From assembly GCA_033442325.1 (NCBI GenBank), contig JAWQFM010000013.1:506929-570928 (forward strand): 64,000 nucleotides of DNA, read 5' to 3'. The notes under the pieces were generated by a model. That model was not told where the DNA came from. It ran no database searches and worked only from the letters and a program-made list of their open reading frames with translations. Shown here piece by piece: positions 35,710 through 59,461 of this stretch (positions are counted from its first letter, which is position 1; every line of letters begins with the position of its first letter). A program made the position numbers and the translations under genes. The DNA is from Salpingoeca rosetta. Taxonomy: Eukaryota > Protista > Choanoflagellata.

Positions 35710-38634
35710 TCACGCCATTTGCAGGCTGGTGATGGCTGCGTGGAGATCGGAAAAGGACGAGCGCTGTGTCGGGTCCGGCACCAAGCACATGCTGTACATG
35801 ATGGACCGAATCGCCGGTGGTCCCAGTGGCGGCTCCTCCAGCCGCAACGTGCCCTCCACCACCGCCTCACGCACATCCTCGTTGCTGGTGAGGTGGTCAT
35901 AGGGGCGGCTGCCACGTGAGAAGATCTCAAACAGCAGCACGCCAAAGCTCCACACGTCTGCAGCCGGCTGATAGGCGCCGTCGTCGCCACGAAGACACTC
36001 CGGTGCAGCCCACCGCACGGGCAGGCGCTCCGTATCGGGCAGGGGTCGCCCAGAGCCAGGCCACTGCGCCAACGCAAAGTCGGCAATCTTGGGCGTGTAT
36101 GCCTCTGCGAGCAGCACGTTGCGTGCAGCAAGGTCCAGGTGCACGACGGAACGGGCTGCGAGGTAGCGCATGCCAGATGCCACGCCCGCCGCAAACGCTT
36201 TCAGGCGCTTTGGCTGCACAGCGCCCGCAGAGCGCAGGCGAAGGTAGCTGTGCAGGTCGCCACGCTCACAGTAGGTCATCACCAGCTTGGGCAAGGGCGT
36301 GTCAAGGCACAAGCCGTGCATCTTGAGCACGTTGTCGTGGTCGAGCGTTGCCAGCACCATGGCCTCGTGCAGCAGGCTGTCATATCTGCTGCGGTGGCGA
36401 CACGCCTTGATGGCCACGCGCCCCTCCTGGTATTGGCCAACATGCACGCGTGCAGTTCGCCCTTTGCCTGTATCGCCCAGTATTTGGGGGTTGGGCAGAC
36501 ACAATTGAGGGGGTAGGGTAGGGTAGAGGTGTTGATGGCGGTTGTACGTGAGCACATGCACGAAGGTGGGGATGGAGGAAAAGGAGAGGGGTGAGGCGTA
36601 GGAATTGTGACTGGAAGTGGGGCGCAGGGAAACGCCGCATTGGGATACAGCAACGAATGACAGCGCACACACCGACGAGACACAAACAAGCAGACATAAA
36701 TCAATGAACAAGCAACAGGAACGAGCGAACAAGCACAACTGACCGAGCACGCGGCCAATGCGGACGTCGGAGGAGGAGAGGAGAAACGGGCGCAGGAGAT
36801 GCGTGCGCGCATCGTCACGGTACAAGGAATGCAATTCCGGTTCCGGGTTGAGGTTGATCAAGTCGCCATCACCACCGCCACCACCAAGGGAGGAGGACGC
36901 GGTGGCAGCGTCGGCGTTGAGGTGCGTGTGAGAGCTGGCCTTGGAGATGGACGCAGAAGACGGGATGCTGCACAGTGCGCCACACACGCACAAGCTGTCG
37001 AGGAGGGGCCTGTTGCAGCTGGGGCAGCGGCACACGCCCTTGTCGTCGCACGAGGCCAGGGGGCGCGGGCAGGGTGTCTGGGCAACAGCACGATCGTGCA
37101 GGTCCTGACATGAAGTGTGGATTGTGTGTGTGTTGGGGGGGGGGAGAGGGTGGAGAACGCGCGGGTGAGGAAGGCACGTAGATTGGTGGACATGTGTGAG
37201 GAGAGGAACGTAGTGGAGGAGTGGAGCAGGATAAACACTCGGCATTGCACGTGCACATGACACAGGTGCACGTGACAGGATCTCGCATACACACGCACAG
37301 TCTATGTGCGCGCAACTGCCACCCATACACACACACGCAAGTAGGCATATGTGTGCAACTTCATGTACGGGCCCATGCACAATTGTGGGTACCTTCATGA
37401 GCTCCTCAAAGTTTCCGTATGGGTCCTGGCGGCCAAAGCGGGCGAGGCGCAGGGCACCTGGCACGCCCTCTACCGCCGCGTGCTGGATCTCGCCCCTGGA
37501 CATGCTGCTGATGATGAGTTGGCCGACATTTGTTTCGCTCAAGCGGAGGAGGTAGGGTGCCGTGCCGCCACGCGAGCTGTTGATGAGACGCGCCTCCGTC
37601 TCCATGCTGGTCAGTCTGCACACGCACACGTTCGCGGACGTGGCCAAAAGGTGGGGGGGGGGAGTGAGGAAGTGTGTGTGTGTGTGTGTGTGTGCGTGAT
37701 GCCACGAGGGCAAAGGGCAATGTCACAAGATGGCATGTACACAGATACAGACACAGACACACGCACAGACACACAGACACACAGACACACACACAAATAC
37801 CAACAGTCCCAAACACACACACACACATACATACACATACACGCACACACGCGCGCGCAGCATAGACGCTATACGCACCTGCCGTGGAATGCACGGTGGT
37901 TGCGGAGATTGAAGACAAAGACGGTGAGATGCAACGCGCACGACGGACAGCAGCGCTTGCTGGTGACGGGGTGGCGTGGGGAACAGCGGCCACACACGAG
38001 CCCACCGCACGTCCGGCAGTGATGGCGTCGGATGGTGAAGGTGAACGTCGTGCCACACGCACGGCACTTTGGTGAGTCGTTGTTGGGCTGCCACAGCTGC
38101 TGGTCAACAAGAAACGGCGCGGGATCAAAGTTGCCCTTCTCATCAAACTGCATCGGTGGGAGGTCCGGTGTTGGCAGCTTCCACGGCAGAATCACAGACA
38201 TGCGGCTGTCGCTTGAGCTGCTCATGGGGCTGCCGGGGTCCTCCGGGTACCTGCTGTACGTGTCGAGCGCGTCTGTCAACTCGGGGGAGGACGCGACTGA
38301 GCTCAGCGCGGGCGTGACGTGGCGCTCCGGCGTTGTGAATCCTGTCGATGTGGCCGTGGCCGTGGTGGCGGGCATGTGCGATGGGTCAAAGTGGTCGTGG
38401 TGATCGTGGTGGGGATGGTGCTCGTCGTTGGCGGCGCCGTCGTAAACGTCATCAGCTTCACTGTTGCCACTGTTGCATTTGCTGCTGCTGCTGTTGTGGT
38501 TGTTGTTGTCGTCGTCAATGACTTGCACGCGATAATGTGCGGCGCTGCGGCGGGTGTGTGGAACATGAATTGTGTCGCTGCTCAGATCAAGCGGCCCAAC
38601 CAACTCGTGCTCCTGTTGTTGTTGCTGTTGTTGC

Positions 38635-38665
<31 letters not shown>

Positions 38666-39050
38666 GCTGTCGTTGCTGTTGTTGTTGTTGTTGTTGTGCC
38701 TCGGGATGGCTGAGTGGCTGCACAGGGGGAGGGCCGCCACTTGACAAGGTGCCATCTTCGTGCTGGTGTGTGTCCGGTGGTACCGCGTCGTCGGGAATCG
38801 TGCGCACACCTGTTGGCTGCACTAACCTCGCTCCTTCCTTCACACCTGCGCGCACGACAGTGTCCAGCAACGCAGCCACCACCCCAGCAACCTCCTCATC
38901 TTGGGTGGCGTTTGTGTTAGCGCTTGTGCTGGCGGTTGTACTGGCGTGCATTGCCGTGTGTTCTGTTAATGCGGCCGTCACCACATCATCTGTTGTGTTG
39001 GCCGCAACACTGGCTATCTGCTCCTGTTGAGCTCCTTCATAACTGCCGTT

Positions 39051-39118
<68 letters not shown>

Positions 39119-39503
39119 GCCATGCGCTGGTGGAGGTGCTTGCACTGGTTGTGTGTGCATGTGCCACCGTGGTGGTGGTGGCTGCTGTTGTTGCTGCTGT
39201 GATGCCGCTGTCAGCCGCCGTGGCTGCTGGGTCCTTGTCCTGTCCATCATCCCACGTGGTGTCCGCATCTGTTGGGTGTCCATGTCCGTTGCTGTTGTTG
39301 TGTGTGTCGGTGGCGTCGTGCTCGGTGTGGTGGGCGCTCGCGTGTGCTGCTGGCGGCATGTCGCTGCTGTGTGGTGCTGTTGGCGTTTTAGCGTCCTCAG
39401 TCACAGCAACGCCGCTGCCCGACGACGGGGATAATGACACCTGCTTGTCCTCTTCTCGCGCGGCAGGGTGTGCGTGGTTGTCGTCCATGCCGTTGGTGTG
39501 CAT
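35710..39503 (-). CDS. FYVE-SH2-tyrosine kinase (choanoflagellate FYTK-type); alternative in-frame ATG at 39641
   Basis: FYVE: WQPNND..CRAC..RRHHCRTCG..CGRCS..RCCPSC. SH2: FHGRLT..YLLRLSE..IQH. Kinase: GKGRTARV, VAIK, HLDLAARNVL, KIADFALA, LPVRWAAPE, DVWSFGVLLFE. Confidence 0.9.
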
Positions 39504-40669
39504 GGAGGGAGTGGGAACACCTGGCCTGCTCCTATCCTTGCAGCAGCTGTCGGAGTCAGTGCAGTTCTTCCTTCGCTCGTTTGCGGGTGTCCTGTTCAAA
39601 CCAAAGCAATTCCAGAGGGCAGGAGGAAAGTGGTGAGACATTGCTCAGCACCCGATTTCGGTGTGCAGAAAAAAAAAGAGGGGGGGGGGGTATTGGCGCT
39701 CGCTCGTCGAGAGACTGTGTGTGTCTTTGCTGGCGGGGCGGGGAGGTTCGCGCTCGCTTTGGGAAGAAGGAAAATACACAAATGGTCACCCACCAATGGG
39801 GCGATGGACCAGAAGCAACAGCGCACAAGTCCACAAACAAAGAGACTCGACGAGCATGGACGACAAAGGAGATTGGTCCAGTCCAGTGTATGTGATGGTG
39901 TGTCACAAACAACAAACAGCGCAGCGGCGGGTGCGGATTTTGGTGTGTGATGACGCATTGGTACCACAGCAAGCCGAGCAAGCCATGACTTGCTTTGAGT
40001 TTTTGCTGTTGGGTGTGCGTTTCACAAACCTCAAGTCAAGGTGGAGAAGATCAATGCTTTGTGAACACGCCGGGCGGCCGCTCACTTGCTCGCTCGCTTG
40101 CTTGCTTGCTTGTGTCCGATGCTCTCTCGACGAACTGGCTCAGCAGACTCCAGCTTTGCTTTGCTTGCTTGTTTGCACACCGCTCACACCCACGATGCAA
40201 GTCCAAGACACAAATCGACGAGCGTCGTTTCGTCGTGTGTGTGTGTGTGTGTGTGTGTGTGGGAAAGCGAGGGCTGCAGAAGAACTGACTGCTGCAAACA
40301 AACCAAACAAACTTTGCAAATTGCATTTGATTAAACCTGTCTGACTTGAATTATTCTCCATGCGTTGCAAAACAAAAGAGTGGCGAAGTGGTAGCGAAAC
40401 GGAGTGGTCCGGAATTTGTGCCAGCTGAAGGAGACACAGCAGAGATGCGCACAAACACACACCTGCCAACCAACCAAGTGAGCGAGAGTGCGCAAGAAGC
40501 GAGAGTCGGTGTGTTGAGAGAGTTGAAGGAGAGAGGTGCGACCAACGATAGGAGGAGACACCTACCTGACTTACAGAGCACGAACGAGAGCAAGAGCAAC
40601 AGCACAGGTCAATAAATACAGGAGAGATCCCAGGTACCAGATCAACTCTCGCACAGCACACACAGCGGC

Positions 40670-40886
40670 ATGCAGGCGATCGCTGCGCGAGTGACGCGAC
40701 GCGGCCACCGCCATCATCAGCAACACCAACACCAACAACAACACCAGCACGATGCCCTTCTTGCAAGCGCAAGTGGTGGCTTGATGAAGCGGCACAGCCA
40801 CAGTGCAAATGGCCACCCCATGTGTCAGGATGACATTGATGTCTGCCGCCACAACCTTCGCCAATGGATTCGAGGTGAGCTTGCTC

Positions 40887-40957
<71 letters not shown>

Positions 40958-41680
40958 TTTTGTGTGCGTGCGTCTGTGTGGTTGTGTGTGTGTGTGTGCG
41001 TGTGTGTGTGTGTGTGTGCAGAAGTTGCAACTCCAGGACTCCATCGGCCTCCGTCAATCATTTGGGTTGTCGCGCCTCACTGCCATGTTTCCCACCCTAT
41101 GCCACACACCTCCACGCATTTCTTAGATGAGTTTCACATGGAGCTGGAGCTTGGACCAGGCCTCGAAGAACTCCGTAAGAGCAATCATCTGTGTTGCTGT
41201 CGCGAGAGCGTGCTGATCTTGATGCCATTTGGGCTGCATCTGGCTGTGTGTGTGTGTGTGTGTGTGTGTGCTTGCGACACAAGGGTGCTCTTTGGTGCGA
41301 ACAATACTAGTACAGCGCGTGATAACACACACACACACACGCGCGCGCGCACGCGCACGCACGCACACTTTCACACGCACACGCACACGCACACTTTCAC
41401 ACGCACACACGCTCACTAACACTTTGTCCACGCGTTCGGTCCAATAGGCACGGGCGTGGTGCTGTGTAAGGTGGCTGGCATGATTGAGCTGGCCCAAACA
41501 AAGGCACTGCTGGCAGATGGAAAGCCGTGGAAGCCCATGCGCCTCAAGTTCAACGAGAAAGCCACCATAGGTGCCTTACCGACTGTCTCTTTTGCTGCTT
41601 GCTTTGTGCTGACTCCATGCTGTCATTGTCCACAACGGCACTCATGCAAAGGCGCGCGCCTAAATTCGACTCCAAATCCC

Positions 41681-41745
<65 letters not shown>

Positions 41746-42010
41746 CCTTTTGCGTGCCAGTTCAACCCTCTCACCTGCACACATACGTGCGGTTACATGT
41801 GTTCTTGCTTTCTTGCTCTTGCTCAATCCACGTGGACCTTCCGCTAGGGTCGTTCTTTGCCAAGGACAACGTCAACAGGTTTCTTGCGTGGTGCGCGCGC
41901 TACGTGGACAAGAGCTTGCTGTTCAAGCTGCATGATCTCAACGGCCACCCAGACAGAGACGGCGCTGTCCTCGGCTGGTGCGTTGTTGTGGGATTAAGGA
42001 TGCTTTGCGC

Positions 42011-42052
<42 letters not shown>

Positions 42053-42557
42053 GCGTGTGTGTGTGCGTGTGTGTGTGCGTGTGTGTGTATGTGTGTGTGT
42101 GTGTGTGTGTGGAGTGTGTTGCATGTTTGGGTGTGGGCTTCAGATTCAGAGGTGTGCGCTGTTTAGGGCGCTTTTGCGACGCTAGTGCATGTGTGAATGT
42201 GCTCGTTGCGTTCGTGTATGCGCGCGCGTGTGTGTGTGCACGCTTGAGGCTGTATCAATATCGAGGGTGCAGCCCATGCCACAGAGCACGATCTGAAGAG
42301 CTGAAGCTTCCCTCACATGTCCACGCTTGCACTGCGTCTGTCCACTCGCAGCTTGACGCGTCTGGCGCGGTCGCAGGTGGCCTCCACGACACCACTTGAT
42401 GCAGTGGAGCACAGCGTCCTTGCCGGCACTTACGAGCCAGGTGCCGTGATGAGTTGGCGAGAGGGCAATGCCAGCCGATTCATCGTCACCGCAGAAGCAC
42501 ACACACACACATGCCGACATGCTTACGTGCACATGCCTGCATGCATACGCGCACGCA

Positions 42558-42615
<58 letters not shown>

Positions 42616-45600
42616 TACATATACACACACACACACGTCCACATGCATGTTTCCTTTGCCAGATGTTGCTACGGTTACGGCTGCAGCAAATGCGGTGCTG
42701 TCGGACCACAACGGGACAGTTGGCGACCACCAAGGCAACGGCGCCTTTGTCATTACGAACGCGACAACGAGCGACCAACAATCGCTCGTCCTCGCCATGG
42801 TGGATCAGGTACGAACACATGTTGGTGCGTGTGTGTGTGCAGGGGTATTTGCTGATAGTGATGGGAATTGTCGTCCAGCGAACTCACAATCCATGCATGC
42901 ACACATTCAAACCCCGTCACACAAACAAACACATGTCCACATTCGCACAACATTTATTCAACCAACCCCCCACCCACCCCACCCACCCCACACACACACA
43001 CACACGCACCAGGCCGTGTTTGCGTGTCCACGTGAGGCGGCCACAGCGTCTCCGTTCGTGTGGTCGCCGCTGCAACGTTTTGTTGCATCAGACACAAGGC
43101 CCCGCGGCTCCGTGGCCAAAATCCTCGAGGTCTTCAGATCTCCACACAGAGCAGGTCAGGAGATGGCACGATACTATGCACACACATAGTGTCACGGTGT
43201 CTGTCAGTCTGTTTGTCTATCTGTCTGTGTGGTTGTCTGTCTGTCTGTCTGTGTGTTTGTCTGTCTGATTGTCTGATTGTTTGTCTGCTGTCTGTCTTTT
43301 TCTCTCTCTCGCGCGCTCTTCCCAACTCTCTACGCTCTTCCCGTCTTTTTCGTGCTCTTCCCGTCTCTCACACAAGCTGTACAACCTACGCAAGCCACAC
43401 CTCACACATTTCTGCGTCATTGCCTGCATGCATGCATGCATGTACAGGTCACCACCACCAGCACCAGCAGCAGGAGAAACCCGCACCGCCACCGCGTCAC
43501 ACAAAGCCAGAACTGAAGACAGTGCCCTCCCAGACGCTGGACGCCAAAGCACAGCGAGCAGATGCCCATGCTGATGGTAATGCGGACACGCAAACATCTG
43601 CTGCTGTCACAGCGGAACAAACATCCGGGGAGGAGGCACGCCACGTGGCTGCAGAGACCACAGCCGACACGAGCAACAACACCGTTGCTGTGAGCGAGCA
43701 GCCTCATCCCGCCGCTCATCACGCTCATCGCGACATTGCCTCCAATGGGTGTAACCCAACGTCAAGCACAATGGCTGATGCAACAGAACCGAGCGTGCTT
43801 TCGGCGTCATCCGCAGCGCCATCATTGTCGCCATTGATGAGCGGTGAAGCGGACACAAACTCCATCGACAGCGACGATTCTGAGGCATCACAGTCACTTC
43901 AATCGTCTGGTGGGTGCCGCTGTTCTTGTGTTTGTTGTCAACGATGGCATTCGTCACTTGGCAGCAGACATTGCGCGCGCGCACACACGCACACACACAC
44001 ACACACACACGCACACACACACGCACACGCACACACGAATGCAAACGAGCAAACTCGCGGGCAAGAGTGTGCATTCCTATTGTTCCTCCGTGTCAAACTG
44101 TACCCATAGCCCTGACCTCACAACCACACCCACAACCACAACCCACGCGCGCACACAACCATGCTGTGCAGATGCGAGCTGCCTTGCACGGGGACCACAA
44201 CGGCCGCTGCCGCTTCCAAAGCCGCGGCGGGCCAGTGCAGCAACAGACGGCGGCAATGGCAGTAGCTATGGCAGTGCAAGTCGTAAGACGAGCACGTGCT
44301 CCTACATGTCGTCCTCTGGTGCTGCCAGCAGTGGGGAGGCAACATCACCGACAGAGCCTGCAGGCATGTGGGCAGCGTTGAAGCCACAACTGCGTGCTGC
44401 AAGCAGTCGCGCATCGTGCTTTTCGTTTGCGGGATCCACCACAAATGCCACGCCCACGTGGTCAACGCGTACCTCGGCTGCCGACGTGCTTGCAGGCATG
44501 AAGAACTCCCTTCCGCTGCCACGCAAGCTTCGGCACCGCAGAGAATCGGAACAACAACAACAACAACAGCAGCAGCAACCACAGCAGCAGGAGCAACAGG
44601 AGCAGCAGGAAGCATGTCAGACTGCAGCAGAGGAAACACAACCCAGCACGGCGCCTTCCACGCCCACACTGCGTCCCCACAACGAGGCGGAGGGAGGTAA
44701 CATTGAGAAGGTCAGCAAGCAAAGCAGCGTGGAAACGATTCGACACGTTAGCTCCAGCGAAGCAGACACGACATCAACTGCAGCATCGAGTGGTCAGGGG
44801 AGCAGTGTGGACGCGCGTGTGTTCGCAACAAGCACCAGCAAGAGCACAGCAGAGGCTGGACGCAAGGCTGTTGGCGGCGCTGACAACACTGAAGCAGCAG
44901 CCGACACTGTGCTGCTGACGCAGGTTTGTTTGAGATGACCGTCGTGCAAGCCTTCTTTTGCTTGCAAGCACGTGACCTGCAGTGTGTGCGGCGTGCGGTT
45001 GTGTATGTGTATGTGTATGTATGTGTATGTGTGTGTATGTGTGTGCGTGTGGATAGTTGAGCAAAACACAACACAAAAACCAACACTCTGGGTCACGAGA
45101 AGCTCCACGGTGTGTGTGCGTGCGTGTGTGTATGTGTGTGTATGTGTGTGTATGTGTGTGTGTGTGTGTGTGTTCTGTTGCAGCTACGCAACCCCAACTA
45201 ACCGTTGCACCCATTCCCGCGACGCGTGTGCTTTAGGAGGAGCTTCAATCACGATTGGAGGAATATGCGGAGCAAAAACTGAAGCGCACGGAGCGCGACC
45301 ACCAGGAAGCCTTGACGCGCCTCGAATACGAGTGCGTTGCCTTGTGTTGTGTTGTGTTGTGTTGTGTTGTGTTGTGTTGTGTTGTGTTGTGTTGTGTTGT
45401 GTTGTATTGTGTTGTGTTGTCTGACTATTGGCGTCTTTGAGAGTGCTTGTGCCACACTGCATGTGTGGTTCTCCATGCTTTTCACTACCAAGCTGCTTTT
45501 GCCATGCCATGCTGCTATCACCTCGTCATTCACTTCAAGACTTGACTCATTATTTATCTCCTCTCCTCTCGCATTTGCGCCTGTACAGGCGAGATGACTT

Positions 45601-47146
45601 GCAGCGACGACTGCAAGCACTGGAGGAAGCAGCAGAAGAGGTGAGCACGTGCAAACACTCAGAGCAACACGCACACACATATACACACGCACACACACAC
45701 ACATACGCACACACACATACGCACACACACATACGCGCGCACACACGCACGCACGCACACACGCACGCACACACACCGTGGAGCTTCTCGTGACCCAAAG
45801 TGTTGGTTTTTGTGTTGTGTTTTTCTCAGCTATCCCTTTTTTATCAATTCATCTGCGCGCTGTTGTGTTGTTGGTTTTGTTGACAACGCGATCAGGTTGA
45901 GAGTTCATATGACGAGAAGCTGAAGAAGATGCAGAAGCAGCGCGATGACGCCAAGAAAATTGCAAACATGCTGCAGGACAGCATTGCAAACTTGCGCATG
46001 GTACGTGCACGTGCACGTGCATGCGTGCAACGTAAAGGGCGACTGCACGTGTGTGTGTGTGTGCTTGTGTTGTCGTACCTTGTCTTGTGTTGTACTTCAT
46101 TGTGCGACGTATCACTGTGTTGGCCGATTTGTTGCTAAAGACCCCCTCTCCTACCAGCAACTCACCCCACTTGCTTTTCATACACTCGCTCGCTCATTCA
46201 TACACTCACTCGCGTATTCACACACACACACACACTAACGCACTGTGCCATGTATCACAGGATCTTGCGGACAGCAAGAATGAGTCTGCTGCGCGCATTG
46301 CTGAGTTGGAACAAGAGCTAACAGAGGCAAAGGAAGCGGCGGCAGTGGTCACCCCGTCATCGTCCACGGAATCAACCGCCACACCGGCGCCATCACCTGC
46401 TACAGCAGCCACACCTGCTTCAATCACGCCACATACTTCGCAGCACGACACGACCGCCGAGCGCGAGGAGCCCATGTTCCTGTCCCGCCTCAAAGCATCC
46501 GTCAAGTGAGTGGGGAAAGGGAGGGGAGGAAAGAGTGGAAGTAAGAGGGAAGAATGAAAAGACGTGAAGGGATTGGTGGTGGAAAGGGAAGGGATGGGAA
46601 GGGAAGGGGAAGGGAAGCAGTGGACACTGTGTGCTTTTGAGCCACGACACTCGCTCACGCATACGTGACACGTGTCCTGCCACTCTCGTGCGCGCCTTCT
46701 TGGCTCATGTGGGTGCGACCTGACTGTACGATGTGTCATAACTTGCTTGCAGGCAATCGTGTGATGACATGCGCAAGGGCCTCAATTCTGCGGACGACGG
46801 CGCAGCAGCAGCAGAGAGGATCCGTGAGCTGGAAGCAGCGCTGGCAAACGCCGAGGAGGAGTTCCAGACGCAGCGGGCAGCCAACGGGTTTCGCATGGTG
46901 TCCTTGTCCTCGCAGGTGTACACGTTGGAGCAGGCCAACCAGGACCTGGAGAGGCAGATTGCCACGCTGCGGTCGTCACTGACAGATGCGCTTGTGCAGC
47001 ACCTGCTTCCACTCTCCAACCTCAAGACGACACAAATCCAGCAGATGCTGCACTCGGCTTCCTGCCCTGCTGCGACCGGGGAGGACGCGAGCGCAGGCAG
47101 TGCACACGAGCACGTTGCAGTTCCGCAGGGCAACACCTTGGTTTAG
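40670..47146 (+). CDS. GAS2-type calponin-homology domain protein with long low-complexity linker and C-terminal coiled coil
   Basis: [60 protein letters not shown] matches the GAS2-family CH domain (GSFFARDNxxNFLxWC). Heptad-rich exons from 45237 to 47146. No GAR domain recognised. Confidence 0.75.
45051..45128. repeat. Left arm of ~80 bp intronic inverted repeat
   Basis: GGATAGTTGAGCAAAACACAACACAAAAACCAACACTCTGGGTCACGAGAAGCTCCACGGTGTGTGTGCGTGCGTGTG is the reverse complement of 45758-45835 with 3 differences. Confidence 0.95.
45343..45420. repeat. (GTTGT)n pentanucleotide repeat, intronic
   Basis: About 15 units in the intron between the two cassette exons. Confidence 0.9.
45758..45835. 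repeat. Right arm of ~80 bp intronic inverted repeat
   Basis: ...CACCGTGGAGCTTCTCGTGACCCAAAGTGTTGGTTTTTGTGTTGTGTTTTTCTCAGCTATCC, complementary to 45051-45128. Confidence 0.95.
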
Positions 47147-47638
47147 GGCATTGATAGATTGATCATCAGCGGCATGAATGCTTGATTACATCTATGAATG
47201 GTTTTTTGTGTTGCTTCCTTTCTTCTTTTGCTTGTTTGCTTGTGTGTTGCTTGTTTGCTTGTTTGCTTGTGTGTTGTTGGGTTCTGTTGTTGCCATCTCT
47301 GCGATGCGCGTTCCCTCCCTTGTTTTCCCATTCTCCCATTGTTCCGTCCTGTTCTCACTGGCCCAAAGACCTGTGTCTGGGTGTCTCAGCCTTTCTTGCT
47401 TTTCACCATCCCTAAAACGGCGCTTCACACCAACCGCAAGCCGCAAGCAAGGGGGAGAAGAGGGTGAAAGGGTGAAGAGAAGAGGGTGAAGAAGAAGAGG
47501 TCTGAAGAAGAAGAGGGTGAAGACTGCCAGCAGCGCGCAGCCACACCGCTTTGCGGAAACGTGTTGGATATCATTCAATAATTGTCCGCAAACAACTGCG
47601 CACGTTGGGGAAGAGTGCAGCAGTGAACGACGACGATA

Positions 47639-50252: not shown

Positions 50253-50433
50253 CCCGAACCGTTCATTCCCCCCTGAGTACAGCTGTAGCGTTCCGTCCAC
50301 CTCCTGTTCTCACCTCCTGTTCTTGCGTGAATGTTTGACAGGTACTGTTGTGAAGAAGGCGCCACTGCTGTGTTCTGTGGATGACGATGGAAACGTGCAC
50401 TACCTCTCTTTGCAGTGGACCGGGATGAACTGA
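47639..50433 (+). CDS. TSEN34: tRNA-splicing endonuclease catalytic subunit Sen34
   Basis: LRKQYNIVCYPIGTLP..QNIFKGVP, and VYRDLVMRGYFLGPGMKFGGHYLVYPGDPYRYHSHF..GRLGTVVKK..YLSLQW. The catalytic Tyr/His/Lys triad is intact. Confidence 0.93.
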
Positions 50434-50572
50434 TGCTTGCAGGCATCAAGAACGCAGTATAGCCGCTTCAACACGCCACCCATGTGTGTTGTCCGACCCC
50501 TACGGTACAGAATAAATAAATAATGTGCACTCACGTCAGCCCGAGCACGCATCGTGTTTGTCTCTCTACCTT

Positions 50573-50638
50573 TCTCCTCCTTCTCCTTCTCCTTCTCCTT
50601 CTCCTTCTCCTTCTCCTTCTCCTTCTCCTTCTCCTTCT
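50573..50638. repeat. (CTCCTT)n hexanucleotide repeat
   Basis: About 11 units between the convergent TSEN34 and EPDR-like genes. Confidence 0.9.
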
Positions 50639-50997
50639 CTCTCTCTCTCGCTCGCTCTTTTACTTGTGTACTGCTTTGAGGCAGCAAGACGGGTGTACAT
50701 ATACACGCACGATGGGTGTCCAAGGAAAGAGAAGGAAGGGGGGATGTGATGTGACATGAAACGCAGGTGCACACAGGAAAAAAAGAGGGGAAGCAGTGGG
50801 AGGGCACAGTCGCGATCTTGCGCGCATATGGCACGGCGGATGCTGGGCAGCGCAGCCAACCCCAAAGAAAGCAGGATGGGTGAAATGATCGAAACGACCA
50901 AGGAGAAATGAGAAAATGAGGAATTGTTGGAGACGGTTGAAGAAGGTGCGACCACATGCAAGCAACACTCACGCTTGCAGCGGCCAAGGCGGCAGCG

Positions 50998-52556
50998 TTA
51001 CTCGTGGTGGCACTCCTCGGGCACGTCAAATGCCTGCAAGCAACGGAGGTGTGTGCAGGTTGAGGTGGGTGGTTGGTGGTGAAGATTATTTGGTCACAAA
51101 ACAAAAGAAACGCTTGAAGAGGCGCGGCAAGAAGTACATGAACACATGAGCTTTTACACATACAGACAGCCAAACAGACACACATCCCTACCTTCTGGTC
51201 CGGCTTGGAGGCATCAAACTTGCGGAAGAAGAAGCGAGAAAAGTCGTGGACGGATTCGCGCTCAAAGGCAACGGGGGTGTTTGGATCCGTCTTGCCAACC
51301 GCAACGAAGAGACGCGTGCCACCGAAGCGGGCCTCCCACGCGTCGAGAGTGCGCTCACGCACGCGGTGCTCGCCGATATACGTTGCGTTGCGCACCCAGT
51401 CGAACGGGTGTGGGGCGCTGCCACGAAGCTCGCGCTCCTCACAGTGGCGCATGTCCTCGCTGTTGATGGTGTACTCGCGGTGGAGGTCATAGCGCTGCAG
51501 GCCGAGCACGTGCAGCACGTGCATGCGGTCGCGGAAGTCGTACCGCTCGACAGCCTTGCCATCCTGCTGGTCGTGTGCCCAGAAGCCCTCGCCAAAGTGC
51601 GTGGCGTTGTGGCTGTCCTCGTGGAACTCCACTTCAATCTCGGACATGAAGGTGTCGGGGATGTTGGGGCGGGGTGGGTCGGCGGCGAGCAGGACGCCGG
51701 CGTTGTGCTGGCACTCCTCGGGGATGTTGAAGAAGCGGGAGGGCGGGGTGGTGGTGTTGAAGTCGCGGAAGTGGTAGCGGGTCATCTCGTGTGCAGATTC
51801 GCGCTCGGAGACAACGGGGCGGTTGGGGTCGCTCTTGCGCACGCCAACGAACAGACGAACGTTGCCGAAGCGGCTCTCCCACGCATCAAGCTTCTCGCCG
51901 TGGTGGTCCTGTTTGAAAACGAGTTTGTTTGTCACAGGTGAGCTTGACTTACATTAACAGCGATGACGGAAACAGGTAGCCAGGAGAGGGAAACAGACAG
52001 CCAAGACAAGGGCTTAAACTGGGGGAGCAAGCGCGTGCGTGCATGTTCTGCAAACACACATGCACAGTTCACAGAGGCATTCGGCTGCAGATGTTGCGCG
52101 TACACAAAACAGCAAGGACATGTACAAAGGTGTGCGCACAATACTGAACACTGGTGAACACCAGTAATGTGAACGCACGTGCTCGCCGACGTAGTGGGCG
52201 TCCTTGACCCAGGCAAACGGTGCAACGAAGGAGCTGTTGAGGTCATGGACGCGGCAGTCGTGGGGGTCCTCGCTGGAGATGAAGAACTCCTTCTTGAGGT
52301 CCCAGCGCTGGAGGCTGAGGAGGTGGAAGACGCGGAAACCCTCGTGGAAGTCGTAGCGCTCCGCAGAGCGGCTGCCGGCGGCGTCGGAGGCAAAGAAGCC
52401 CTCGCCAAAGCGCGTGCGGTCGCGTTCATGCAGCTCGACCTCAGCCATGGAGAGGAAGGTCGCAGGGATGTTGGGCCGGGGCGGCTCCTGCGCCAGCACA
52501 CCCGGCGTCGCTGCGATCGCAGCCACAAAAACAGCCAGCACAACAAGCAAGCGCAT
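50998..52556 (-). CDS. Secreted protein with two tandem ependymin-related (EPDR/LolA-fold-like) domains
   Basis: Signal peptide MRLLVVLAVFVAAIAA. Two ~190-aa repeats each start PPRPNIPxTF, contain FGEGF, ERYDF, C..L....PFxWVxxAxYxGEH..LDAWExRFG, and end F(N/D)(I/V)PEEC, like the EPDR terminal FxxPxxC. Three exons. Confidence 0.7.
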
Positions 52557-53246
52557 CGCTGGTACTGGAACAAGCCTCAGATGAGAAGGTGAGAAAGCTG
52601 AGAAAGGTAAAAGGTCGTTGTTGTTTGTTTGGTCTGCTGTGCATGGGATCGTGGGAAATGAGGGTGCACAGTGTGTGTTGTGAGTTGTGAGTTGAGGCAA
52701 GCAACAAGGCCAAAGAAGAGGCTCAGAAAGGAAGAAGAAAGAAAGGCGCTCATGGGGTGGGGTGGCGCAGTAGCAGCACAAGAGTGCAGTGGCTTGCTTC
52801 AGTGCAGCTTCTTGCTTGTTGTGCGTTGTTTTTTTTGTTTTGGGAGAACGGGTGACATTTAGGTGACAGCGGTGGCGATGTCGCGATGTTTGGGGGGAAA
52901 TGACGTAATTGTGGCTTTTGTGGTGTCGCATGCGAAAATGCGCGGCGCGACCGGCGGGGTTTTTCGTGAACGATGCTGATGTGCAAGACAACATGGCAGC
53001 AAGCCAGCAGCACCACAAGCACAAGCAGCACAAGCAGCACAAGCAGCACAACATGTTGCAGCCACACGGACACAGCCGTGGTGTGACATGAGAGAGATGT
53101 GGAGGTGGCTCAGTTGTTAAAAGGTGAGTTAGTTAGTCAGGGGTTCACACGACACATATCCCACGCCCGCCCACTCTTACCACGTACGTCGTCGCCAACA
53201 CACCACGACCACAGACGAGAAGGAAGTGCGCTGACAGGCCGACAAG

Positions 53247-57819: not shown

Positions 57820-59461
57820 GACAACCTTGTGGGCAGGGTGGTTGGCCATCTGTCGTGGGTCTCCGAACTTTGCTGCCTCTCCTTCCTTGACGGTCTCCTT
57901 CCTTGACTGTCTCCTTCCTTCCATCACACTGTCCTCCATCCCCTCCCCACTTCCTTTCAATCTTTGACAGAGGAATATGTTGCAGTGAGCCCAGACACAG
58001 ACAGATTACCGAGGAAGCGTGTTGTTCACAGAAGGCCCTTGCCGCCAGCCATGTGCGACAAGACACAGAGCAGCGACGATGATGATGATGATGCCGAGAG
58101 TAATGCGAGCGATAATGAGAACGGCGGCCTGCACAACATGGACGATGACGACGATGAGCCAAAGCGCACACGTGTCAAGCACCGCCACTTCAACTGCCAT
58201 GGACGCCAGTCCAGCATCCATCAGACATCGTTTGTCCCTCGCTCCGACGCAGAACCAGCGGAGCGGTTTATCCTTAGCGAAGTCAAGCGCAAGAAGCGCT
58301 TGCAAGTCAAGGTGTGTTTGTGCGTGCGTGTGTGTGTGCGTGCGTGTGTGCGTGTGTGTGCGCGTGTGTGCGTGTGCGTGCGTGCGTGTGTGTGTGTGCG
58401 TGTATGTATGTATATATGCGTGTGTGCGTGTGTGCGTGTGTGCGTGTGTTTGTATGTTTATGCACGTGCGCGTATGTTTGTGAACCCGTCACCTTGGCTC
58501 TTGGCTTGCTTCATTACTCACTTACATGTGTTGTCGTCCACTGTGCCATCAGGAGGAGCTCTCATCGTTGCCAACATCGAGCGATGCGCCAGCACCGTCC
58601 CCACGTGTCAAATTCACCGTCAAGCAGGTGAGGCAGACATGCAAACAACAGGCAGTGAGGAAATGGGTGGGAGTGCAGCTTCCCACATGCACGGTTCTCC
58701 TCCGTTGACTGTCGCATCTCCGCCTCCCTTCCGTGTTGTCCTTGTTCTCCTGCCTCGCTGTATTCATGCCCCAATGCCTGTCACACAACACAACACCAGG
58801 TCAAATCCATTGTGGAGAAAGCTGTGCGTGCGCGGGAGACAGAGCTCAGAGAAGAGTTTGCTGACATTCTTGCACGAAAGCTTGAAGGTTGGTCGCTTGC
58901 TGCTGTGTTCGCCGGCTGTTGTGTCTTTGTGTGTGTGTGTGTATGTGTGTGTGCTCTTGTGTGCACGCGCTCTTGTGTGCGTGTGCGTGTGTGTGTGTGT
59001 GTGCGTGTGCGTGTGCGTATGTGTGTGTATGTCAGCCACAGCCACAACCACAACCACAACCACAACCACAACCACAACCACAATCACGACCACAATCACG
59101 ATCACCAGCAGCAGCACTACGAACCGTAGCGTCTCTCATCCATGTTGCCTTGTGCCTGGTCCATTGTGTGCAGAGCAATACCACCAGTTTACAAAGTACA
59201 CACAGGACTTTGTCCATCAACGGCTACAGCAATCCCAATTCAACTGTAAGTCACCCTGCTCTTACACGTGTGCTTACATGTGCGTGCACGTGCGTATGGT
59301 TCTCTGCCTTATTTAATCGAGTGGACCGCCTTTCCAGCGTGCACGTGCGTATGGTTCTCTGCCTTATTTAATCGAGTGGACCGCCTTTCCAAACTCACGC
59401 GCGACCCGCCTGCCCTGCTCTTTCCGCTCTCATATGTGCGTCGCATGCAGACATGTCGTGA
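57589..59461 (+). CDS. AKIRIN: Akirin
   Basis: N-terminal MSCASVKR (cf. MACATLKR) and a basic NLS-like KKCR. C-terminal [52 protein letters not shown]. Final 11 coding nt lie at 59451-59461. Confidence 0.9.
59282..59391. repeat. Perfect 55-bp tandem duplication in the last akirin intron
   Basis: GCGTGCACGTGCGTATGGTTCTCTGCCTTATTTAATCGAGTGGACCGCCTTTCCA occurs twice back to back. Confidence 0.92.

What the first reader, a model, noticed from the sequence alone, without database searches (positions are those of the whole stretch)
45051..45835. Inverted repeat brackets a frame-preserving two-exon cassette encoding exactly 7 coiled-coil heptads (candidate exon-looping/circRNA switch)
Seen: two ~80 bp arms (45051-45128 and 45758-45835) are reverse complements. 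They have 3 differences, one of which would be a G-U pair in RNA, and ~60 bp of each arm is not microsatellite. They sit in the introns either side of exons 45237-45331 (95 nt) and 45589-45640 (52 nt). These sum to 147 nt = 49 aa ([10 protein letters not shown]...[10 protein letters not shown]), with phase-0 junctions at both outer ends and no stop. Known: complementary flanking intronic sequences promote exon skipping and back-splicing. Inference: pairing could delete exactly 7 heptads from the GAS2-type protein's coiled coil without shifting register, tuning rod length. It could also produce a 147-nt circle that is an endless open frame.
Basis: partly seen in the sequence, partly recalled or inferred. 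Interest (0 to 1): 0.8.

Follow-up and report, generated by a model that had tools for sequence, protein, structure and literature searches.

The report
Intronic inverted repeat around two exons
Two introns of a choanoflagellate cytoskeletal gene carry a real 80-base inverted duplicate around two small in-frame exons, but indirect evidence suggests a harmless DNA-copying by-product, and the exon-skipping/circular-RNA idea stays untested.

Summary
The window is Salpingoeca rosetta and the gene is PTSG_05526 (XP_004993395.1, 995 aa). Introns 9 and 11 carry an inverted duplicate of 80 nt, 77/80 identical: a 60-nt unique core plus 20 nt of (TG)n. It trails into microsatellite similarity (123 nt, 88%). 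It brackets exons 10 and 11 (95 + 52 = 147 nt, phase 0/0, residues 700-748), exactly as in the public model.

The interpretation could not be tested directly.

Indirect evidence leans against a switch:
- Exon 10 is held by 16 runs from 5 studies.
- Published work found 8 exon-skipping events against 38,486 negatives in this species.
- No paper links Salpingoeca and circRNA.
- Other intron pairs of this gene reach 80-95% of the focal duplex energy through (GU)n/(CA)n tracts alone.

The "7 heptads, register kept" point carries little weight. The cassette is the N-terminal 49 residues of a predicted 115-residue helix that follows disordered sequence, and the heptad register is not continuous. The 147-nt circle has no stop in frame 0, but no AUG either.

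Most likely this is a neutral inverted templated insertion. It remains a clean, cheap test case.

The parts
40670..47146 (+). Gene PTSG_05526 of Salpingoeca rosetta (XP_004993395.1 / F2UBG6), 14 exons and 13 GT-AG introns, 995 aa
   Evidence: 100% match of exon 9 to P0001. Accessions and names. Exact rebuild of P0001 from the window.
44172..44923 (+). Exon 9 (752 nt), a disordered Ser/Thr/Ala/Gln-rich region ending in phase 0; donor CAG|GTTTGT
   Evidence: The residues before 699 have pLDDT below 50.
44924..45236 (+). Intron 9 (313 nt), which holds the left arm inside a GTAT-type (GT)n array
45051..45130 (+). Left arm: 60-nt unique core (45051-45110) plus 20 nt of GCGT-type (TG)n; similarity trails on to 45173
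45237..45331 (+). Exon 10 (95 nt), residues 700-731; its first residue coincides with the start of the predicted long helix
   Evidence: Held by 16 runs of 5 studies.
45332..45588 (+). Intron 10 (257 nt) with a (TGTTG)n run at about 45338-45420, a weak competing partner of the left core (-41.6 against -105.3 kcal/mol)
45589..45640 (+). Exon 11 (52 nt), residues 731/732-748
45641..45895 (+). Intron 11 (255 nt), which holds a GCGT-rich (CA)n array and the right arm
45756..45835 (-). Right arm: reverse complement of the left arm, 77/80 identical; similarity trails back to 45713
45896..46000 (+). Exon 12 (105 nt, phase 0/0), the continuation of the helix

Best explanation
This is a genuine, locally unique inverted duplication inside two introns of a normally spliced gene.

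Likely origin (inferred). About 80 nt was copied in inverted orientation from intron 11 into the (GT)n array of intron 9. The copied piece is a 60-nt unique stretch plus the first 20 nt of the adjoining microsatellite. The likely process is a replication template switch seeded by the oppositely oriented (GT)n and (CA)n tracts.

Likely effect (inferred). The pre-mRNA can in principle form an 80-123 bp stem that loops out exons 10 and 11. In this organism the short introns (255-313 nt) are removed efficiently and the cassette is constitutively included. Any skipped or circular product would then be splicing noise, not a regulated switch.

Shown: the repeat, the exon structure, the folding potential, inclusion of exon 10 in assembled transcripts, and the helix position of the cassette. 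Inferred: the origin and the lack of a regulatory role.
For: Repeat and its limits.

Origin. Identity is 77/80 and then falls to microsatellite level. The 20 shared microsatellite bases are GCGT-type, like the adjoining intron-11 array (9 CG). The rest of the intron-9 array on both sides is GTAT-type (8 TA against 2 CG). This suggests an insertion into a pre-existing array. There is no target-site duplication.

Inclusion. The cassette is in the public model. Exon 10 words are held at 0.86-1.00 in 16 runs of 5 studies. These include small runs that held only 17-34% of the 1.5-kb stretch, which is about the exonic share.

Species prior. 8 exon-skipping-positive against 38,486 negative triplets in S. 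rosetta, and no 3n bias in unicellular holozoans (PMC6142364).

Complementarity is commonplace here. Best duplex for introns 9-11 is -266.9 kcal/mol, against 1-5 at -253.5, 1-2 at -232.8, 8-9 at -231.5 and 1-11 at -227.8. Both arms' microsatellites therefore have strong competing partners. Competition between intron pairs is known to redirect back-splicing (PMC5052039).

3n blocks are common in this gene: 4 of 12 single internal exons and 4 of 11 exon pairs.
Against: No junction reads were examined, so low or condition-specific skipping or back-splicing is not excluded. Contig assemblies drop rare variants.

The pair is the strongest intron-intron duplex in the gene and the only inverted repeat with unique sequence in 64 kb.

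96% identity over 80 nt could reflect constraint as well as youth.

The cassette start coincides with the start of the predicted helix, so removing it would give a clean shorter helix.

The published exon-skipping survey scored single-exon triplets, so a two-exon skip would have been missed.
Confidence: 0.62

Rival explanations
1. Pairing of the arms brings the exon 9 donor and the exon 12 acceptor together, and likewise the exon 11 donor and the exon 10 acceptor. The gene then makes a shorter protein lacking residues 700-748, and/or a 147-nt exonic circle, at biologically meaningful and possibly stage-regulated levels.
For: The arms pair in the minimum-energy and centroid folds, z = -13. The core alone gives -105 kcal/mol and the 80-nt unit -153 kcal/mol. 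The arms lie 60-128 nt from the splice sites they would bridge. Flanking complementary sequences are an established driver of circularization in animal cells (PMC5052039). The cassette is 3n and phase 0/0, and its removal joins ...TVLLTQ to VESSYDEK... in frame. It is exactly the N-terminal 49 residues of the predicted helix.
Against: Inclusion is seen in every assembled transcript set examined and in the public model. Exon skipping is almost absent in this species. No paper in the library joins Salpingoeca and circRNA. Similar duplex energies at other intron pairs of the same gene come without any annotated alternative form. The circle's open frame has no AUG. The heptad argument carries no weight.
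Confidence: 0.15
2. The arms are the terminal inverted repeats of a small foldback or MITE-like transposable element, or two copies of a dispersed repeat family that happen to face each other.
For: Outer unique sequence plus inner tandem repeats resembles foldback-type termini (my own knowledge, not tested). The arm boundary is sharp at GGATAG...CTATCC.
Against: No target-site duplication. No other copy in 64 kb on either strand, even with 3 mismatches. No exact match in the metagenome collection. The 'element' would contain two coding exons that continue the host reading frame and helix.
Confidence: 0.08
3. The long intronic duplex is a substrate for double-stranded-RNA processing (small RNAs or editing) and not for splice-site choice.
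For: An 80-123 bp near-perfect duplex is long enough for such enzymes in organisms that have them (general knowledge).
Against: RNAi pathway components, including Argonaute and Dicer, are reported absent from S. rosetta (PMC6040629). No RNA family reaches threshold over the arms.
Confidence: 0.03
4. Assembly artefact: a chimeric or foldback misassembly created one arm.
For: Inverted repeats can arise from library or assembly chimeras.
Against: The arms differ at 3 of 80 positions and have different outer flanks. The exons between them are in the order and orientation that the spliced protein requires. Contig sets of three further studies hold 49-89% of the words of the 1.5-kb stretch, far more than its exonic third.
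Confidence: 0.02

Closest known systems
Intronic complementary sequences that flank circRNA-forming exons in animals (for example inverted Alu pairs; Zhang et al. 2014, Liang and Wilusz 2014, as cited in PMC5052039)
   Same: Reverse-complementary stretches well above the 30-40 nt needed (threshold from my own knowledge of Liang and Wilusz 2014) sit in the two introns that bracket a small exon block, close to the splice sites. Predicted pairing loops the block out.
   Different: No back-splice or skip product has been shown here. The host is a choanoflagellate with short introns and almost no exon skipping. The arms are a single local duplicate and not copies of a dispersed repeat. Many competing microsatellite pairings exist in the same gene.
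GAS2 / GAS2-like proteins (CH domain plus GAR domain, with a C-terminal tail in the GAS2L forms)
   Same: The only significant solved-structure match of residues 60-175 is the GAS2 CH domain (9kbx_A, E 1.4e-9). The nearest Atlas structure cluster for residues 55-297 is 'Growth arrest specific 2' (TM 0.57).
   Different: The Pfam CH score is below the curated cut-off (19.6 against 26 bits) and no GAS2/GAR domain is detected. My own model of residues 55-300 was too poor to test this (pLDDT 37.6). The C-terminal half has no detectable relatives.
Inverted templated insertions from replication template switching between nearby inverted microhomologies (FoSTeS/MMBIR-type events; my own knowledge)
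   Same: A short segment reappears nearby in inverted orientation. One junction lies inside oppositely oriented microsatellites that supply homology. There is no target-site duplication.
   Different: The event itself is inferred from the microsatellite 'dialects' of the flanks. No ancestral, unduplicated allele is available for comparison.

Membership tests
Exon block flanked by intronic complementary sequences that yields circRNA or a skipped isoform | Reverse-complementary sequences in the two flanking introns, at least about 30-40 nt | tested here: met
   80 nt at 77/80, extending to 123 nt at 88%. Duplex energy -153 kcal/mol for the 80-nt unit.
Exon block flanked by intronic complementary sequences that yields circRNA or a skipped isoform | Back-splice or skip junctions present in RNA | not testable with these tools
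No transcript-derived partial proteins were found. Only inclusion could be shown.
Exon block flanked by intronic complementary sequences that yields circRNA or a skipped isoform | The product depends on the pairing (lost when an arm is disrupted) | not tested
   Needs a minigene or genome editing.
Exon block flanked by intronic complementary sequences that yields circRNA or a skipped isoform | The across-exon pairing outcompetes other pairings of the same introns | tested here: inconclusive
   The 9-11 pair is the strongest (-266.9), but 8-9 (-231.5), 5-9 (-215.6) and 1-11 (-227.8) are close. The unique core has only a weak competitor in intron 10 (-41.6 against -105.3).
GAS2 family | N-terminal calponin-homology domain of the GAS2 type | tested here: met
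   9kbx_A, Growth arrest-specific protein 2, E 1.4e-9, residues 60-175. Pfam CH is sub-threshold at 19.6 bits.
GAS2 family | GAR (GAS2-related, PF02187) domain | tested here: not met
   No PF02187 hit at E up to 0.1 on the full protein or on the exon ORFs. There is only a structural lead, and my own model is unusable.
MITE / foldback transposable element | Target-site duplication next to the terminal inverted repeats | tested here: not met
   The outer flanks ...GTGTGCGTGT and CTTTTTTATC... share nothing.
MITE / foldback transposable element | Multiple dispersed copies in the genome | tested here: inconclusive
   None in the 64-kb window. The rest of the genome is not searchable with these tools.
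Canonical coiled coil made of seven uninterrupted heptads | Continuous helix over the cassette | tested here: met
   AlphaFold2 single-sequence model: one helix from residue 699 to 813, with pLDDT of 89 or more over nearly all of it.
Canonical coiled coil made of seven uninterrupted heptads | One heptad register through the cassette and across its borders | tested here: not met
   A crude a/d scoring shows the best register changing near residues 716, 750 and 779. The best single register over the 49 aa scores only 0.46. No dedicated coiled-coil predictor was available.

The most novel reading that the evidence does not exclude
The 80-nt intronic pairing does drive reproducible back-splicing or two-exon skipping of exons 10-11 in S. 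rosetta. That would be the first case of complementary-intron-mediated circRNA or cassette skipping in the sister group of animals. It would also show that this animal-style mechanism can work in a genome that otherwise has almost no exon skipping.
Probability: 0.15. Interest if true: 0.6.

Novelty: new member of a known kind. Interest (0 to 1): 0.3.

Why it matters
If the pairing had a measurable effect, this locus would be a natural minigene. It could show whether intron complementarity alone can redirect splicing in a unicellular relative of animals. That bears on how exon skipping and circRNA biogenesis became common in animals. If it has none, as I expect, it is a useful negative example: strong intronic complementarity, both unique and microsatellite-built, is tolerated without visible consequence where short introns are spliced efficiently. 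Either result needs only a junction count in existing RNA-seq data.

Tried and rejected
1. Read laying on the whole gene (41500-47450) with three raw RNA runs and one contig run. A second stretch beside them was blocked by the cap.

2. Reaching spliced transcript contigs through the protein collections.
- The exon 9 ORF gave no hits (the query is rich in low-complexity words).
- An exact-ORF lookup of the last exon found no record.
- P0001:640-860 found nothing.
- P0001 region 690-995 found only itself.
- The 90% cluster has one member.
No isoform information could be had this way, and no orthologues were found to test conservation of the 49 residues.

3. Literature: no paper holds both Salpingoeca and circRNA, none holds the locus tag, and the tag is not in the supplement of PMC6142364.

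4. Rfam and tRNA scans of the arms: nothing near threshold.

5. Metagenome scan for the shared 33-nt part of the core: no match.

6. The hint that runs X13-X16 (share 0.17-0.18) might lack the cassette was rejected: they hold exon 10 at 0.86-1.00.

7. The siRNA-precursor idea: I recalled RNAi genes in S. rosetta, but the paper says they are absent.

8. AlphaFold2 of residues 55-300 to look for a GAR fold: pLDDT 37.6, so the model was not used for a fold search.
Full report
WHAT IS THERE

The region was read directly. The 60-nt stretch 45051-45110 recurs as a reverse complement at 45776-45835 with three mismatches. No dinucleotide shuffle of the window gave any match. In register from the outer end, identity per 20 nt is 18, 19, 20, 20, and then 13, 15, 7. 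The duplicated unit is therefore about 80 nt (77/80): a 60-nt unique core plus the first 20 nt of a (TG)n tract. The 123-nt, 88% arms reported by the repeat finder and by the alignment are that unit plus ordinary microsatellite similarity. As RNA pairs, the three differences are one U-G wobble (45057/45829) and two true mismatches (45062/45824 and 45088/45798).

IDENTITY OF THE GENE

A search of protein representatives with the adjacent large exon returned one protein that is 100% identical over the exon. It is hypothetical protein PTSG_05526 of Salpingoeca rosetta (EGD73832.1, XP_004993395.1, UniRef F2UBG6, 'CH domain-containing protein'), 995 aa. Splicing 14 exons at GT-AG sites in the window rebuilds this protein exactly.

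They enter and leave in phase 0 and encode residues 700-748. The arms lie in intron 9 (313 nt) and intron 11 (255 nt), 60-128 nt from the nearest splice sites.

THE 'GAS2-TYPE' LABEL

Pfam gives only a sub-threshold CH hit (19.6 bits against a cut-off of 26) and no GAS2/GAR domain. However, the only significant match among solved structures is the CH domain of Growth arrest-specific protein 2 (9kbx_A, E 1.4e-9, residues 60-175). The nearest Atlas structure cluster for residues 55-297 is also GAS2 (TM 0.57; a lead only). My own model of that region was too poor to use (pLDDT 37.6). The CH domain is therefore GAS2-like, while a GAR domain is not shown. The C-terminal half has no detectable relatives, so conservation of the cassette could not be examined.

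CAN THE ARMS PAIR, AND IS THAT SPECIAL?

Folding 44924-45895 as RNA puts the arms together in both the minimum-energy and the centroid structures (z = -13). The core alone gives -105 kcal/mol and the 80-nt unit -153 kcal/mol.

As a control I computed the best duplex for all 78 pairs of introns of this gene. Nearly every intron carries (GT)n or (CA)n tracts. The focal pair is the strongest at -266.9 kcal/mol, but it is not an outlier:
- introns 1-5: -253.5
- introns 1-2: -232.8
- introns 8-9: -231.5
- introns 1-11: -227.8
- introns 5-9: -215.6

Intron-intron complementarity is therefore the rule in this gene, and both focal introns have strong alternative partners. Only the unique core is distinctive, because it gives specificity. 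It is the only non-microsatellite inverted repeat in the 64-kb window. Its only local competitor, the (TGTTG)n run of intron 10, is weak (-41.6 kcal/mol). Work in human cells shows that flanking complementary sequences promote circularization and that competing pairs redirect it (PMC5052039).

RNA EVIDENCE

The decisive test is a count of junction reads. Those places lie in intron 4 and are not part of the finding, and I sent none of their letters to any search tool afterwards.

What remains is indirect:
- In the first run search, eleven runs held 17-34% of the words of the 1.5-kb stretch. I calculate 24% for exon-internal words alone. This is the signature of spliced RNA.
- Three runs of one study held 88-89% and runs of two other origins 49-68%, so the intronic sequence is present in independent data.
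- In the second search, exon 10 alone was held at 0.86-1.00 by 16 runs from 5 studies, dated 2011 to 2024, including all of the low-share runs.

Inclusion is thus the assembled form everywhere. Contigs cannot show rare isoforms, so this does not exclude minor products.

PRIOR FROM THE LITERATURE

Grau-Bove et al. 2018 quantified alternative splicing in 65 eukaryotes, including S. rosetta. Their table lists 8 exon-skipping-positive against 38,486 negative exon triplets for this species, and 127 positive intron-retention triplets (PMC6142364, supplement). The paper concludes that unicellular holozoans lack skipping-rich transcriptomes and lack a 3n bias among skipped exons. Their method scores single-exon triplets, so a two-exon skip would not have been scored, but the base rate is very low. 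No paper in the library holds both 'Salpingoeca' and 'circRNA', and none mentions the locus tag.

THE PROTEIN-LEVEL ARGUMENT

AlphaFold2, run on the single sequence, predicts one continuous helix from residue 699 to 813 with pLDDT of 89 or more over nearly all of it. It is preceded by sequence with pLDDT below 50. The cassette is therefore the first 49 residues of a 115-residue helix and not an internal module. Removing it would join disordered sequence to a 66-residue helix, so keeping a heptad register across the deletion has no meaning.

A crude a/d-position scoring finds no single register through the cassette: the best scores 0.46. The register changes near residues 716, 750 and 779. Forty-nine is seven times seven, but the 'seven heptads' are arithmetic.

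A 3n length is also unremarkable here: 4 of 12 internal exons and 4 of 11 adjacent exon pairs of this gene are 3n. The hypothetical 147-nt circle has no stop in frame 0, as claimed. That frame also has no ATG, and both ATGs lie in a frame with two stops per turn.

ORIGIN

In intron 9 the 80-nt unit sits inside a (GT)n array. The parts of that array on either side carry GTAT-type interruptions (8 TA against 2 CG). The 20 microsatellite bases that belong to the unit are GCGT-type, like the part of the intron-11 array that adjoins the right arm (9 CG). There is no target-site duplication, no third copy in the window and no match in the metagenome collection.

The simplest reading is a single inverted templated insertion, copied from intron 11 into the intron-9 microsatellite and seeded by the opposite orientation of the two tracts. 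This is inference from small counts. First-stage notes on other windows of this genome mention many inverted duplications of various sizes. They are unchecked, but they fit a genome in which such events recur.

OTHER READINGS

- A double-stranded-RNA processing role is unlikely, because RNAi pathway components, including Argonaute and Dicer, are reported absent from S. rosetta (PMC6040629).
- No Rfam family or tRNA-like feature overlaps the arms.
- An assembly artefact is unlikely, because the arms differ at three positions, have different flanks, and enclose exons in the order the protein requires.

VERDICT

The proposed function rests on a mechanism known from animals but is untested here. 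The indirect evidence leans against a regulated switch: constitutive inclusion, near-absence of exon skipping in the species, pervasive competing complementarity, and the cassette's position at the end of the helix. I put about 0.62 on a neutral intronic duplication with at most noise-level by-products, and about 0.15 on reproducible pairing-driven skipping or circularization. The locus is a clean test case, and counting junction reads in existing RNA-seq would settle it.

Noticed in passing
window 43013-43189 (exon 7 and the start of intron 7): The exon 7 peptide could be the N-terminal half of a degenerate GAR-like domain. Reading on in frame into intron 7 adds about 11 residues and then meets a stop at 43187-43189. 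Retention of intron 7 would therefore give a GAS2-sized short protein (CH plus a GAR-like region) instead of the 995-aa form. Pfam does not recognise a GAR domain in either version.
   Followed up: partly
window 40891-40973 and 42553-42635: An 83-nt, 90% inverted match built entirely from (GT)n/(CA)n lies in introns 1 and 5 of the same gene. It brackets exons 2-5 (390 nt, also 3n). The whole-intron duplex energy is -253.5 kcal/mol, close to the focal pair.
   Followed up: partly
window 42099-42134: These places in intron 4 of the gene (inside a GT-rich microsatellite region) made read laying refuse the whole stretch.
   Followed up: no
window 50400-53054, minus strand: Two neighbouring ORFs share repeated blocks (for example '...PPRPNIP[DA]TF[ML]S...E[VL]E[FL]HE...'), and the DNA shows internal direct repeats (51244-51341 with 51787-51884; 52394-52508 with 51581-51703). 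This looks like a tandemly duplicated gene pair with internally repeated domains.
   Followed up: no
window 59282-59391: A perfect 55-nt tandem duplication.
   Followed up: no
window 37869-39641, minus strand: A long ORF with two long poly-Gln runs and a C-terminal FYVE-like zinc-finger motif (CRACG...RHHCRTCG).
   Followed up: no
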